From IMG/VR virus record IMGVR_UViG_3300044796_000662, positions 298,938 through 362,937 of that record: a stretch of 64,000 nt of DNA. The stretch is one strand, 5' to 3'. This document shows, one piece after another, positions 1,082 through 2,910 of this stretch. Numbering within the stretch: the first letter of the stretch is position 1; every line of letters starts with the position of its first letter. The position numbers and the translations under genes are program-made. The notes beneath the pieces are model-generated. The model searched no databases. It was not told where the DNA came from and saw only the letters and a program-made list of their open reading frames with translations.

Positions 1082-1099
1082 GCCCTCGCTCTACACCAA

Positions 1100-1135
1100 A
1101 AGCGGAACCCCGGAGAGTAGCCTTCCCCGGGGTCC
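1100..1135 (-). terminator. hairpin plus U-tract closing the permuted-tRNA RNA
   Basis: Minus strand CCCCGGGGAAG-GCTA-CTCTCCGGGG followed by TTCCGCTTTT. Confidence 0.5.
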
Positions 1136-1206
1136 CTTTGTGCGACTTGCGCCGCTCGTCTTTTTAGGGTGACCACTGGCGTTTAAGGTCGGCAGTGAGT
1201 CCTGAG

Positions 1207-1304
1207 CCTCTAGTGTCCTGTCGCTAGACGACCGCCCTGTAGGTGTTGCGTAGCTGCGCGAGGCAGCAGCAGGGTGGGCGGGATTCAAACCCGCGTCCTA
1301 GAGA
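1207..1304 (-). ncRNA. permuted tRNA-like module B (Glu/Asp-like D-arm)
   Basis: TCTCTAG; T-arm GCGGG-TTTGAAT-CCCGC (1278-1294); 3' acceptor CCACCCT (1271-1277); 31-nt linker; 5' acceptor AGGGCGG (1232-1238, 6/7 pairs); D-arm GTC-TAGCGACAG-GAC; CTAGAGG pairing with TCTCTAG (7 bp). Confidence 0.8.
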
Positions 1305-1375
1305 ATTGTTGCCTTCCGTTCGATTGGCCTCCCGACGATGTTGCTGAGTCTGGAGTAGTAGTCTCAGGCTGAGCC

Positions 1376-1505
1376 GCGCTACGGGTTGCGTCTGCCAATT
1401 TCGCCACCCCCGTGTTGTCAGGTCCAGCCTTTACGGCCGGGCCTTGCACCCTGCGGTGCAGTACGGGGGGAAGGATTCGAACCTTCAGCTTTCGCCGTCG
1501 CGCTA
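1376..1505 (-). ncRNA. permuted tRNA-like module A (Leu-like D-arm)
   Basis: Order on minus strand: GCGC-G-ACGG; T-arm GAAGG-TTCGAAT-CCTTC (1470-1486); 3' acceptor CCCCCGT (1463-1469); 48-nt two-hairpin linker; 5' acceptor ACGGGGG (1407-1413, 7/7 pairs); D-arm GCG-AAATTGGCAGA-CGC; CCGT-A-GCGC pairing back to the upstream strand. Confidence 0.85.
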
Positions 1506-1562
1506 GATGAGTCTGAATCTGAGTCTGAGCTTGAACTCCACTCTTGTCTTACACCGCCGAGG

Positions 1563-2315
1563 TCACGGCGCGAAGACGAAATCGAAGATGGGCTTGCCGG
1601 CGGACAGATCCTTCGGCACGTCGTGGCTGTTGGCGGTCTCCTTGGCCTGCTTGACCGCGTGCTGGAGCTTCTCGATCCGAGCGAGCAGGAGATCCTTCTG
1701 GTCCATCGGCATCGCCCCGGAATACTTGATGGTCTTCCAGGTGCCGGTGATCTTGTCCTCCGTAATGAGCTGGACCTGCGCCGGGTGCTCCTTCGAGCCC
1801 GGGTGCATCACGAGAGGCACCTGGAGCTTCTTCGTGCGGACCGTCTCGGTCGGCTGCGTCGCGTAGAGGCTCTGCTCCTTGTCGAGCGTCCACTTCTCGG
1901 CCGGGTCGAGCGTCGGCATCTTCTTGACCTCCGTGTAGAGGTCGTCGAGCTGGTGCCCGAGCCAGAGCAGGTACGTGACCGGGGCATCCTTCAGGATCGT
2001 CTTGCCCTCCACGACCACGTCCGCCTTCGCGGAGCAGTTCGTGACGTCGCGCTGGAAGGTCATGTCGAACAGCTCGGTCTGCTCCTTCTGAATGGTCTTC
2101 AGGAGGACGGCCGTGTTCTGCTGGACGTTCTGGCGCTCGTCCGGCAGCATCTCGTGCAGGTTCGACTCCGGGTTCGCGTCGCGAGCCGACCACGTCTTCA
2201 CGTGGCCGCTGAAAAGCGCCGGCTTCTGGAACGTGTGGTAGATGGCGGTCAGCTTCTCGGCCACCTTCGTCTTGAGGCCCGACTCGATGGCAAGAACGTG
2301 ATGCAGCTTCGACAT
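1563..2315 (-). CDS. conserved uncharacterised ~250-aa protein (resembles, from memory, the DUF7873-type family of actinobacteria and phages)
   Basis: MSKLHHVLAIE… start with GGAGA RBS; motifs PVTYLLWL, RTKK, HPAQVQ, YSGA; family name is an unverified recollection. Confidence 0.8.
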   Translation of the reverse strand: MSKLHHVLAIESGLKTKVAEKLTAIYHTFQKPALFSGHVKTWSARDANPESNLHEMLPDERQNVQQNTAVLLKTIQKEQTELFDMTFQRDVTNCSAKADVVVEGKTILKDAPVTYLLWLGHQLDDLYTEVKKMPTLDPAEKWTLDKEQSLYATQPTETVRTKKLQVPLVMHPGSKEHPAQVQLITEDKITGTWKTIKYSGAMPMDQKDLLLARIEKLQHAVKQAKETANSHDVPKDLSAGKPIFDFVFAP

Positions 2316-2511: not shown

Positions 2512-2910
2512 ATGTCCGTCCTGCTCCGGTTGCCCCTCTACATCGAGCCCGCCCTTGCACTCGTTCCCACGCCGACCCCCGAGCCGGCCGAGGAAGACCT
2601 CACGTGGCCCGAGGGTGAGGAACCCGTGCGGCCAAGGACCCGCGGCGAGTGCGAGGATGCCCCGCGCCCGTGCCCGTGGGTCTCGTGCAAGCAGCACCTC
2701 TTCTGGGAATACCTGAAGCACCATCCGGAGGCGACGGTCGAAACGATGAAGCACTCGTGCGTGCTGGACATCGCCGACGAGGGCGGCATGACCCTGGAAG
2801 ATGTCGGCGAGATCTTCGGGCTCACCCGAGAGCGCATCCGACAGCTCGAAACCGATGCCCTGCGGAAGCTCAAGAAGCGCCCGCAGTTGATGCAGTACCG
2901 GGCCGAGTAG
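2512..2910 (+). CDS. sigma70 region-4-like HTH protein with N-terminal Cys motif (myxobacterial type)
   Basis: RPRTRGEC…PCPWVSCK + GGMTLEDVGEIFGLTRERIRQLE; start uncertain. Confidence 0.8.
   Translation: MSVLLRLPLYIEPALALVPTPTPEPAEEDLTWPEGEEPVRPRTRGECEDAPRPCPWVSCKQHLFWEYLKHHPEATVETMKHSCVLDIADEGGMTLEDVGEIFGLTRERIRQLETDALRKLKKRPQLMQYRAE

What the first reader, a model, noticed from the sequence alone, without database searches (positions are those of the whole stretch)
1170..1555. Hexameric CUCAGA-like repeats between the modules, and a leaderless 12-aa alternating basic/hydrophobic ORF
Seen in sequence: all three single-stranded segments flanking the modules carry the same 6-nt periodic motif (TTCAAG CTCAGA CTCAGA TTCAGA CTCATC; GGCTCAGCCTGAGACT…CCAGACTCAG; GGCTCAGGACTCA). 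The first segment reads GTG GAG TTC AAG CTC AGA CTC AGA TTC AGA CTC ATC TAG = MEFKLRLRFRLI* (1503-1541). It begins 8 nt after the genome's GGTGTA promoter-like motif, and its stop sits at the base of module A. The second segment reads RLSLRLLLQTQ in one frame. TAGCGCG is directly repeated on both sides of module A. Inference: these are either protein-binding repeats or tmRNA-like mRNA segments encoding amphipathic beta-strand tags or peptides coupled to the tRNA mimics.
Basis: partly seen in the sequence, partly recalled or inferred. Interest (0 to 1): 0.72.

Follow-up and report, generated by a model that had tools for sequence, protein, structure and literature searches.

The report
Hexamer repeats in a two-headed tRNA-like RNA
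The 6-base repeats are real and conserved, but they are not a peptide gene: they are a hallmark of an undescribed ~450-base phage RNA with two rearranged tRNA look-alikes, always encoded next to one unknown protein.

Summary
On the minus strand, 1555-1098 is a terminator-ended ~450-nt non-coding RNA just downstream of a DUF7873 gene, inside the tRNA array of a 363-kb phage. It holds two circularly permuted tRNA-like domains: T-arm, acceptor 3' strand, loop, acceptor 5' strand, D-arm.

The gene-RNA pair recurs in all but 2 of 83 related loci. These include cultured Gordonia, Arthrobacter, Klebsiella and Vibrio phages. No Rfam family covers the RNA.

The hexamers follow a family-wide consensus N-A-R-N-Y-U, usually four in a row 5' of module A. 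More copies lie in the other inter-helix segments. Periodicity is 6, with lag 3 depleted.

The 12-aa ORF loses its start and stop in the closest relative. A complete ORF in that frame occurs in only 7 of 58 loci.

One YUNAR pentad pairs with a complementary pentad across the arm; the following two have no partner in cis. My best reading is a periodic, mostly single-stranded recognition platform, probably for DUF7873. That step is inferred, not shown.

N73-CCA is encoded after the acceptor strand in about 45% of modules. One metatranscriptome fragment ends in a non-templated C, so the modules are probably cut and CCA-tailed.

The parts
1550..1555 (-). GGTGTA promoter-like motif just upstream of the RNA. 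Not tested as a promoter.
   Evidence: Read. It is conserved upstream of the RNA in L198 and L117. The same hexamer lies upstream of the two neighbouring genes, at 2359 and 1097. In Klebsiella phage FBKp24 the depositors annotate a promoter at the same relative place.
1535..1539 (-). P1, 5' strand (GGAGU). It pairs with 1356-1352.
   Evidence: Predicted by RNAalifold. On alignment A5, helix 1 has 6 of 6 pairs with changes on both sides and 87% of cells paired.
1504..1533 (-). Hexamer tract CAAGCU CAGACU CAGAUU CAGACU CAUCUA, with family consensus N-A-R-N-Y-U. Pentad U1 (1529-1525) pairs with 1367-1363. Pentads U3 and U4 (1517-1507) have no cis partner.
1503..1541 (-). Judged fortuitous.
1495..1503 (-). 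P2, 5' strand (GCGC-G-ACGG). This helix takes the place of the anticodon stem of module A and pairs with 1384-1376.
   Evidence: Helices 4 and 5 on A5 have all 8 pairs with changes on both sides and about 87% of cells paired.
1462..1486 (-). Module A: T-arm (GAAGG-UUCGAAU-CCUUC), acceptor 3' strand CCCCCGU and discriminator A.
   Evidence: On A5 the T-arm and acceptor are 99% paired.
1414..1461 (-). Insert closing the acceptor stem of module A (two hairpins). It is the presumed segment removed by processing.
   Evidence: Fold. Loop length ranges from 5 to 91 nt across the family.
1388..1413 (-). Module A: acceptor 5' strand ACGGGGG, U8, G9 and a D-arm with GG. The D-arm is most like the phage's own tRNA-Leu.
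1376..1384 (-). P2, 3' strand (CCGU-A-GCGC).
1357..1375 (-). Segment 2a, holding pentads CUCAG (1373-1369) and CUGAG (1367-1363, the partner of U1), followed by ACUACU.
1352..1356 (-). P1, 3' strand (ACUCC).
1341..1351 (-). Segment 2b (AGACUCAGCAA) with pentad CUCAG at 1348-1344. It links the two domains.
1298..1333 (-). 5' strands of P4 (1333-1325), P5 (1317-1311) and P6 (1304-1298), which enclose module B. Includes the conserved AAUCGAAC loop.
   Evidence: On A7, 95% of cells are paired and all 36 pairs show changes on both sides.
1270..1294 (-). Module B: T-arm (GCGGG-UUUGAAU-CCCGC), acceptor 3' strand CCACCCU and discriminator G.
   Evidence: A metatranscriptome fragment ends here, as ...CCACCCU-G-C-C.
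1239..1269 (-). Insert closing the acceptor stem of module B.
1215..1238 (-). Module B: acceptor 5' strand AGGGCGG (one C.A mismatch), U8 and the D-arm.
1194..1213 (-). P6 3' strand (1213-1207) and segment 3, GCUCAGGACUCACU, with pentads at 1206-1202 and 1199-1195.
   Evidence: The family consensus for segment 3 is YUNA(N)RAYUNAY.
1167..1193 (-). 3' strands of P5 (1193-1187) and P4 (1175-1167), with the conserved CUUAAACG loop between them.
1098..1136 (-). Intrinsic terminator (13-bp stem plus a U run), the likely 3' end of the primary transcript.
   Evidence: The stem covaries in relatives.
1563..2315 (-). DUF7873 gene (250 aa), the invariably adjacent protein partner candidate.
   Evidence: Pfam PF25283, E = 1.9e-84. 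The linkage to the RNA is shown.

Best explanation
The hexamers are RNA-level elements of a conserved phage non-coding RNA, not codons.

The RNA spans about 1545-1098 on the minus strand. It carries two circularly permuted tRNA-like domains. In each domain the anticodon stem-loop is replaced by a long arm made of helices separated by internal loops. The hexamers (N-A-R-N-Y-U, equivalent to YUNAR pentads spaced by one base) fill those loops.

The first or second pentad of the 5' strand pairs with a complementary pentad on the 3' strand. The next two pentads form a conserved unpaired stretch of about 12 nt. The same-sense motif recurs on the opposite strand and in the arm of module B.

I infer that this periodic array is a docking platform read one hexamer at a time by a protein. 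The prime candidate is the co-encoded DUF7873. The result would be a Y-RNA-like particle whose two tRNA-like heads, probably cut in the acceptor loop and CCA-tailed, engage tRNA-binding factors.

Shown: the RNA family, its structure, the motif, its periodicity and its non-coding nature (about 0.9 on its own).
Inferred: protein binding, the identity of the binder, and the biological role (about 0.35-0.4). The confidence given is for the statement as a whole.
For: Family and linkage:
- 77 of 83 loci downstream of DUF7873 homologues have a permuted T-arm plus a 7-bp acceptor by strict pattern search. With models R1 and R2, only L177 and L178 lack any module.
- The pair is present in cultured phages: Mimi, Phendrix, FBKp24 and Vibrio D502.

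Structure:
- The 5' domain has 93% of cells paired and the 3' domain 95%. Slid controls give 39-51%. No shuffle in 500 reaches the observed values.

Motif:
- A2 95%, R3 96%, Y5 90%, U6 86%.
- 52 of 73 loci have 4 or more consecutive hexamers, against 3% of shuffles.
- Lag-6 autocorrelation is 0.40 and lag-3 is 0.20.

Pairing of one pentad:
- The centre pair is GC 11, CG 10, GU 7.
- In a permutation test, U1 and U2 are complementary to U2' (P = 0.03 and 0.01), while U3 and U4 are at the null level.

Same-sense copies on both strands:
- Seen in the window, FBKp24 and D502. In FBKp24 the copies cannot pair with each other (my own hand check of the sequence), which favours recognition over helix formation.
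- The tract persists in variants that lack module A, namely L115 and D502.

Non-coding:
-.

Independent transcription unit:
- Terminator and an annotated promoter in FBKp24.

Expression:
- A relative's RNA fragment has depth 35 in a peat metatranscriptome where the flanking phage sequence has depth 0.
Against: - No binding data exist. The complex predictor would not fold a protein-RNA job.
- The DUF7873 model (pLDDT 87.6) has no informative structural or sequence relative, so nothing marks it as RNA-binding. The only hints are a long beta-hairpin and a near-invariant RTKK stretch.
- The linkage could reflect co-regulation rather than binding.
- The pentad is a quasi-palindrome, so RNA-RNA pairing could explain its conservation.
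- The A5 and A7 alignments are fitted to the models' structures, which inflates the paired percentages.
- The permutation P-values are modest and the sequences are phylogenetically related.
Confidence: 0.55

Rival explanations
1. Codon or anticodon mimicry. Each pentad Y-U-N-A-R overlaps a Leu/Phe codon (YUN) with a Leu/Phe anticodon (NAR), flanked as in an anticodon loop (Y32-U33 ... R37). On this reading the tract is a multi-copy decoy or sponge. It would act on a factor that reads tRNA-Leu/Phe anticodon loops (a host anticodon nuclease or a modification enzyme), or it would pair with tRNA anticodons as a T-box specifier does.
For: The motif's statistics fit the anticodon-loop pattern: Y5 90%, U6 86%, A2 95%, R3 96% and N4 72% purine. 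The D-arm of module A is most like the phage's own tRNA-Leu genes. Module A has discriminator A73 in 73% of loci. The locus sits in phage tRNA arrays.
Against: The mapping follows automatically from any YUNAR motif, so it may be numerology. N1 is A in about 20% of hexamers, which from general knowledge is rare at position 34 of bacterial anticodons. The FBKp24 lineage uses a NAWCUU variant. No target is known. No tool here can test it.
Confidence: 0.15
2. A purely RNA-structural role. The quasi-palindromic pentads would let the two strands pair in alternative registers, giving a sliding or switching helix. Alternatively they would let copies of the RNA pair with each other into multimers, as the large phage-associated RNAs ROOL and GOLLD do.
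For: One pentad pair covaries. In several RNAs all four 5' pentads share a centre base complementary to the single 3' partner: the window, L198, L199, L168, L181 and L159. The motif matches its own reverse complement.
Against: U3 and U4 show no complementarity above the null to any 3' pentad. Self-duplexes would carry two mismatches per six bases. In the AU-rich FBKp24 lineage the repeats cannot pair at all (my own hand check of the sequence). There is no second tract in the genome for pairing in trans.
Confidence: 0.15
3. A tmRNA-like messenger. After cleavage in the acceptor loop, a charged tRNA-like head would enter stalled ribosomes, and a hexamer segment would be translated as an amphipathic (K/R)(L/F)n tag.
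For: The gene order (T-arm, acceptor 3' strand, CCA, linker, acceptor 5' strand) is that of two-piece tmRNA precursors. CCA is encoded in about 45% of modules, and a CC(A) end is seen in RNA. By construction, the ARN-YUN frame rarely holds a stop inside the tract (8 of 58 loci). The two variable hexamer positions are third codon positions in that frame.
Against: There is no conserved stop, and the frame runs into the T-arm in 31 of 58 loci. G3:U70, the alanine identity element of all tmRNAs, occurs in about 1 of 120 modules. Rfam tmRNA scores 13.6 bits against a threshold of 47. ARAGORN, which detects permuted tmRNAs, finds nothing here but finds a standard tmRNA elsewhere in this genome. Lag-3 periodicity is depleted. 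AGA is a rare codon in this genome. The neighbouring segments P1, P2 and P4-P6 covary as helices.
Confidence: 0.04
4. A genuine leaderless 12-aa peptide gene (MEFKLRLRFRLI).
For: The ORF exists, with a GTG start 8 nt after GGTGTA and its stop at the base of module A.
Against: The start and stop are lost in L198. A 1-nt indel shifts the frame in L117. Only 7 of 58 loci have a complete ORF in that frame, similar to the other two frames at 5 and 3.
Confidence: 0.02

Closest known systems
YrlA, the bacterial and mycobacteriophage Y RNA (Chen et al. 2014, PMC4201824)
   Same: Both have a tRNA-like domain in the same permuted order: variable region, T-arm, acceptor stem-loop, D-arm. In both it is closed by a helix in place of the anticodon stem. 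M. smegmatis YrlA has a 7-bp acceptor that is cut by RNase P and receives CCA. The family here has a 7-bp acceptor, encoded CCA and a CC(A) RNA end. Both appear to be modular scaffold RNAs encoded beside a protein partner.
   Different: The partner gene here is DUF7873, not Ro60/Rsr, and no TROVE domain is found in the genome. The GNCGAAN0-1G Rsr-binding motif is present in only 6 of 73 loci. This RNA has two tRNA-like heads in a single ~450-nt transcript. The hexamer tract has no counterpart in the passages of that paper I read.
Two-piece (circularly permuted) tmRNA of alpha-proteobacteria, cyanobacteria and others
   Same: The gene order is acceptor 3' half with CCA first, then a linker, then the acceptor 5' half. 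The tRNA-like domain lacks an anticodon arm and sits on a long helix.
   Different: There is no G3:U70, no conserved tag ORF and no Rfam or ARAGORN match. The D-arm is fully tRNA-like, with GG.
Protein-titrating or attenuator RNAs with periodic short motifs, such as the TRAP-binding (G/U)AG repeats of the trp leader, HutP UAG repeats and CsrB GGA repeats (from general knowledge)
   Same: A short degenerate motif repeats at a fixed spacing in largely unpaired RNA. This is the signature of an oligomeric protein reading one unit per subunit.
   Different: The motif (N-A-R-N-Y-U), the period (6) and the context differ. No TRAP, HutP or CsrA homologue is implicated, and binding is untested.
GOLLD and ROOL, large ornate RNAs of phages and prophages that often lie near tRNA genes
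   Same: They are large structured phage RNAs of unknown function located in or near tRNA clusters.
   Different: There is no Rfam match to either at gathering scores. This RNA is smaller and has a different architecture.

Membership tests
tmRNA (RF00023 and the permuted variants in clan CL00001) | Covariance-model score at or above the gathering threshold | tested here: not met
   Best match 13.6 bits against 47, covering only the T-arm and acceptor of module B. Nothing at gathering in the window or in 20 related loci.
tmRNA (RF00023 and the permuted variants in clan CL00001) | G3:U70 alanine identity pair in the acceptor stem | tested here: not met
   The 3:70 pair is G-C or C-G in most modules. 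G-U occurs in 1 of 47 module B copies and in none of 73 module A copies.
tmRNA (RF00023 and the permuted variants in clan CL00001) | Conserved tag reading frame ending in a stop codon | tested here: not met
   No frame is conserved. The segments downstream of the acceptor 5' half are covarying helices.
tmRNA (RF00023 and the permuted variants in clan CL00001) | CCA 3' end on the tRNA-like domain | tested here: met
   CCA is encoded in 34 of 73 module A and 19 of 47 module B copies. One RNA fragment ends in ...G-C-C.
YrlA / bacterial Y RNA | tRNA-like domain in the order T-arm, acceptor stem-loop, D-arm | tested here: met
   The definition is taken from PMC4201824.
YrlA / bacterial Y RNA | Encoded within about 4 kb of a Ro60/Rsr (TROVE) gene on the same strand | tested here: not met
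   No TROVE match in the 363-kb genome, which is 76% complete. The adjacent gene is DUF7873 in every locus examined.
YrlA / bacterial Y RNA | GNCGAAN0-1G motif near the 5' end (the proposed Rsr contact) | tested here: not met
   Present in 6 of 73 loci within 100 nt 5' of the T-arm. The window's GGCGAAAG is one of them and is not conserved in L198 or L117.
YrlA / bacterial Y RNA | Bound by Rsr in cells | not testable with these tools
   Needs immunoprecipitation.
Small protein-coding gene | Start and stop codons and the frame conserved in relatives | tested here: not met
Small protein-coding gene | Period-3 signal and genome-typical codon usage | tested here: not met
   Lag-3 autocorrelation is 0.20, the lowest of lags 1-14. 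AGA is used three times but makes up 4.4% of Arg codons.
Canonical tRNA gene (RF00005) | Cloverleaf with an anticodon arm, detected by ARAGORN or Rfam | tested here: not met
   Only a 14.6-bit T-arm fragment is matched. ARAGORN is silent at this locus.
Cas7-type (RAMP) backbone protein binding RNA in 6-nt steps (considered for DUF7873) | Significant structural similarity to Cas7 | tested here: not met
   The top Foldseek hits are Cas7 chains, but with E about 1e-2 and TM 0.11-0.14. VIA-align finds only helical bundles, Z up to 8.3.

The most novel reading that the evidence does not exclude
A widespread phage ribonucleoprotein built on a two-headed tRNA mimic that is CCA-tailed and possibly aminoacylatable. 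Its arm displays four tandem copies of a Leu/Phe anticodon-loop-like (or codon-like) pentad. On this reading it is a multivalent tRNA decoy or sponge that phages carry inside their tRNA arrays, to defeat host tRNA-targeting defences or to retune translation, with DUF7873 as its dedicated partner.
Probability: 0.12. Interest if true: 0.9.

Novelty: new variant of a known kind. Interest (0 to 1): 0.72.

Why it matters
Phage tRNA arrays are usually read as codon-usage aids or as replacements for tRNAs destroyed by host defences. This locus shows that the arrays also hide a conserved gene-plus-RNA module, for which at least 844 homologues of the protein are known. The RNA combines three features:
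- tRNA mimicry of the Y-RNA type
- the permuted, CCA-ended layout of two-piece tmRNA
- a strictly periodic hexamer array

The module is unannotated in cultured phages, and in Klebsiella phage FBKp24 part of it is mis-called as a suppressor tRNA. It occurs in phages of Gordonia, Arthrobacter, Rhodococcus, Rhizobium, Vibrio, Klebsiella and Serratia, so it can be tested at the bench now. It offers a new handle on how tRNA-like RNAs are used outside translation, and on the function of DUF7873.

Tried and rejected
- A DNA pattern search for the conserved D-arm 15-mer in viral contigs gave 111 hits. Only the three copies of one contig were real.
- A metagenome scan with the single protein gave one locus, L198.
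- Three encoding-contig look-ups returned no DNA.
- I considered that DUF7873 might be Cas7-like, which would explain a 6-nt register. The weak Foldseek hits were not confirmed by VIA-align, so I dropped the idea.
- Other searches with DUF7873 gave nothing informative: PHROGs, PADLOC and NCBIfam, a PDB profile search, and AFDB and ESM Atlas fold searches.
- Complex prediction with two protein copies and the 219-nt RNA was not folded. The tool gives no verdict for RNA, so this is no evidence either way.
- A longest-helix search for P1 did not separate real loci from shuffles. The covariance model replaced it.
- Tests for pairing between the 5' pentads and the segment 3 pentads were at the null level. 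The best case (U3' with S2, P = 0.03 among 14 tests) is not claimed.
- The RNA-library contig in run X2 spans 16.9 kb at flat depth, so it says nothing about transcript ends.
- No phage CCA-adding enzyme (PF01743) was found.
Full report
**Setting.** The window is the last 64 kb of a 362,937-bp IMG/VR virus record, about 62% G+C. ARAGORN finds 53 tRNA genes and a standard tmRNA in that genome, and an RtcB ligase is also present. The finding lies on the minus strand inside the tRNA array, between tRNA-Phe and tRNA-Glu. It sits directly downstream of a 250-aa gene of Pfam family DUF7873 (window 1563-2315, E = 1.9e-84).

**The observation.**
- The tract CAAGCU CAGACU CAGAUU CAGACU CAUCUA is at 1533-1504.
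- The ORF runs from GTG at 1541 to TAG at 1503.
- GGTGTA is at 1555-1550.
- UAGCGCG occurs on both sides of module A.
- CUCAG-type copies lie in the two further segments.

Tandem Repeats Finder gives period 6, 3.7 copies. Within the window a loose 12-mer search is not above chance. However, a run of three or more perfect N-A-R-N-Y-U hexamers is unique in the 363-kb genome.

**What the locus is.** The two 'modules' are circularly permuted tRNA-like domains. Each has a T-arm, immediately followed by a 7-nt acceptor 3' strand. Then comes a loop or insert, the complementary acceptor 5' strand, U8, and a D-arm with GG. Rfam sees only fragments: tRNA at 14.6 bits and tmRNA at 13.6 bits. An intrinsic terminator at 1136-1104 closes the unit.

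**Recurrence with DUF7873.** The same arrangement follows DUF7873 homologues that are only 40-47% identical.
- 77 of 83 downstream regions have a T-arm plus a perfect 7-bp acceptor, mostly twice, 150-190 nt apart.
- With the covariance models, only L177 and L178 lack any module.
- The protein has 844 homologues at E of 1e-5 or better, all annotated as hypothetical.
- 75 cultured phage records carry the gene.
- The RNA is present but unannotated in Arthrobacter phage Mimi and Gordonia phage Phendrix.
- In Klebsiella phage FBKp24 part of it is annotated as 'tRNA-Sup-TTA', and a promoter is annotated between the gene and the RNA.
- No Rfam family reaches its gathering score over this RNA in the window or in 20 related loci.
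- Literature searches for DUF7873, for permuted tRNAs in phages and for phage tRNA-like Y RNAs returned nothing describing it.

**Structure.** I built a model of the 5' domain (R1, from the window and three relatives) and one of the 3' domain (R2). Both align dozens of loci.
- 5' domain: 93% of cells form standard pairs, against 39-51% when partners are slid. P1 has 6 of 6 pairs with changes on both sides, P2 has 8 of 8, and the T-arm, acceptor and D-arm are 99% paired.
- 3' domain: 95% paired, covariation score 0.84 against 0.19 in shuffles, and all 36 pairs show changes on both sides.

These alignments are fitted to the models, so the percentages lean high. Even so, the many G-C to C-G and A-U exchanges are hard to explain otherwise.

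The resulting layout, 5' to 3', is:
- P1
- hexamer tract
- P2
- module A
- P2'
- segment 2a
- P1'
- segment 2b
- P4, P5 and P6
- module B
- P6'
- segment 3
- P5' and P4'
- tail and terminator

The hexamer-bearing segments are therefore the internal loops and linkers of the two arms that replace the anticodon stems.

**The hexamers across the family.**
- In 73 non-identical loci, the segment 5' of module A has autocorrelation of 0.40 at lag 6 and 0.35 at lag 12. Lag 3 is 0.20, the lowest of lags 1-14.
- The consensus is N-A(95%)-R(96%)-N-Y(90%)-U(86%).
- 52 of 73 loci have four or more consecutive hexamers, against 3% of shuffles. Four is the modal number, and the first hexamer is usually CAAGCU.
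- The 3' strand of the same arm carries two same-sense hexamers followed by AUY before P1'. One more follows P1'. Segment 3 reads YUNA(N)RAYUNAY.
- The tract persists in variants that lack module A: L115 and Vibrio phage D502.
- In the 30%-identity Klebsiella lineage it persists as a NAWCUU variant.

**Is the tract paired?** Written as pentads Y-U-N-A-R, the unit is a quasi-palindrome.
- In the model alignment, the first 5' pentad pairs with the second pentad of segment 2a. U-A and A-U are invariant. The centre pair is GC 11, CG 10, GU 7 and other 16. The R-Y pair is AU 14, GC 13, GU 7.
- In a permutation test, the partner's centre base is complementary to pentads 1 and 2 more often than expected: 0.67 against 0.50 (P = 0.03) and 0.65 against 0.45 (P = 0.01).
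- Pentads 3 and 4 are at the null level against every 3' pentad and against segment 3.
- In the window, CUCAG at 1529-1525 pairs with CUGAG at 1367-1363. All other pentads have C at the centre and have no partner, in the RNA or elsewhere in the genome.

So part of the array forms a short helix, and a conserved stretch of about 12 nt remains unpaired.

**Coding tested.**
- L198, whose neighbouring protein is 82% identical, has GCG in place of GTG and no stop. L117 has an indel that shifts the frame.
- Across 58 loci, a complete ORF in the K/R-L/F frame exists in 7, comparable to 5 and 3 in the other two frames. That frame runs into or past the T-arm in 31 loci.
- The frame is nearly always open inside the tract only because ARN and YUN cannot be stop codons.
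- It is true that the two variable hexamer positions are third codon positions in that frame. But the nucleotides are more constrained than a basic/hydrophobic peptide would need: there is no CGN Arg and no Val, Ile or Met codon.
- In this genome AGA, used three times here, is 4.4% of Arg codons.

I conclude that the ORF is fortuitous.

**tRNA-like ends.**
- After the acceptor 3' strand, the next bases are N73-CCA in 34 of 73 module A copies and 19 of 47 module B copies, against a chance rate of about 1.6%. Most of the rest have C74.
- The discriminator is A in 73% of module A copies and U or G in module B.
- Acceptor loops range from 5 to 91 nt, often just ACCA plus a few bases.

In a peat metatranscriptome (X13), a 164-nt contig consists of an Illumina adaptor, one extra base, window 1269-1403, and a second adaptor. 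Its depth is 35, while the rest of the 4.5 kb laid has depth 0 apart from sub-1 depth over two tRNA genes. Its 12 differences from the window are exactly the L198 states. In RNA sense it ends ...CCACCCU-G-C-C, followed by the adaptor's A, where both genomes read G-C-U. This fits trimming and CCA addition at module B, as reported for M. smegmatis YrlA. It is one contig from a relative, so I treat it as suggestive.

**Comparison with known systems.**
- The domain order and the RNase P/CCA behaviour match YrlA. However, the Ro60 gene is absent and the proposed Rsr-binding motif is present in only 6 of 73 loci.
- The gene order matches two-piece tmRNA. However, G3:U70, a tag frame and any model match are missing, and the phage has its own tmRNA.
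- I therefore file it as a new variant of the tRNA-like scaffold RNAs, not as a member of either family.

**Mechanism.** The evidence consists of a strictly periodic, same-sense motif on both strands of an arm. It is largely unpaired, fixed at about four copies, and invariably next to one protein gene. From general knowledge of TRAP, HutP and CsrA targets, this is the pattern expected for an oligomeric protein that reads one unit per subunit.

DUF7873 is the obvious candidate. Its AlphaFold model (pLDDT 87.6) is a helical bundle with a beta-sheet and a long hairpin, and the family alignment has a near-invariant RTKK stretch. It has no informative relatives. Binding is inferred, not shown.

Two rivals remain open:
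- The pentads could mimic Leu/Phe anticodon loops or codons. The D-arm of module A is most like the phage's tRNA-Leu.
- The quasi-palindromes could serve alternative registers or multimerisation.

Noticed in passing
window 1269-1403 (minus strand), run X13: A peat metatranscriptome holds a discrete 136-nt fragment of a near relative's RNA at depth 35. It runs from the D-stem of module A to ...CCACCCU-G-C-C at the acceptor end of module B. The last C is not templated in the window or in L198. This suggests processing and CCA addition.
   Followed up: partly
family-wide: acceptor loops of both modules: N73-CCA is encoded right after the acceptor 3' strand in 34 of 73 module A and 19 of 47 module B copies. 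Loops are often just ACCA plus 2-10 nt, the layout of permuted tRNA or two-piece tmRNA genes.
   Followed up: yes
L207 2518-2597 (Klebsiella phage vB_KpM_FBKp24, NC_061421.1): The record's 'tRNA-OTHER / tRNA-Sup-TTA' feature overlaps the P5/P6 arm, T-arm and ACCA of module B of this RNA. It is probably a mis-call rather than a suppressor tRNA.
   Followed up: partly
L115 3764-4034; L209 1990-2260 (Vibrio phage D502): Natural variants carry only one tRNA-like module. Module A is replaced by a short hairpin, yet P1 and the hexamer tract are kept.
   Followed up: partly
window 1325-1318 and 1188-1181 (minus strand): Two strongly conserved internal-loop strands between P4 and P5, AAUCGAAC and CUUAAACG, are nearly invariant across the family. 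Their role is unknown.
   Followed up: no
window 2359, 1555, 1097 and 62 (minus strand): GGTGTA precedes the DUF7873 gene, the RNA and the next gene. Genome-wide it occurs 99 times on the minus strand and 61 on the plus strand, against about 66 in shuffles. It may be a phage promoter element.
   Followed up: partly
genome C1:273515-273899, outside the window: ARAGORN calls a standard one-piece tmRNA with tag ANDNGVAQARAA.
   Followed up: no
genome C1:21351-21503, outside the window: ARAGORN calls a tRNA with a CUA anticodon (labelled Pyl, i.e. amber-reading) next to an odd tRNA with a two-base anticodon.
   Followed up: no
genome C1:267060-268319, outside the window: An RtcB RNA ligase gene (PF01139, E = 8.6e-88) lies at the edge of the tRNA array. 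No TROVE/Ro60 protein and no CCA-adding enzyme were found in the 76%-complete genome.
   Followed up: partly
window 2512-2910 (plus strand): A small ORF with a sigma-70 region 4 domain lies among the tRNA genes. L117 has a homologous gene in the same neighbourhood.
   Followed up: no
window 1404-1388 and the phage tRNA-Leu genes: The D-arm of module A (UGGCGAAAUUGGCAGACGC) is most similar to the phage's tRNA-Leu(caa) and tRNA-Leu(cag) D-arms. The hexamer core N-A-R spells Leu/Phe anticodons. This may be coincidence.
   Followed up: partly
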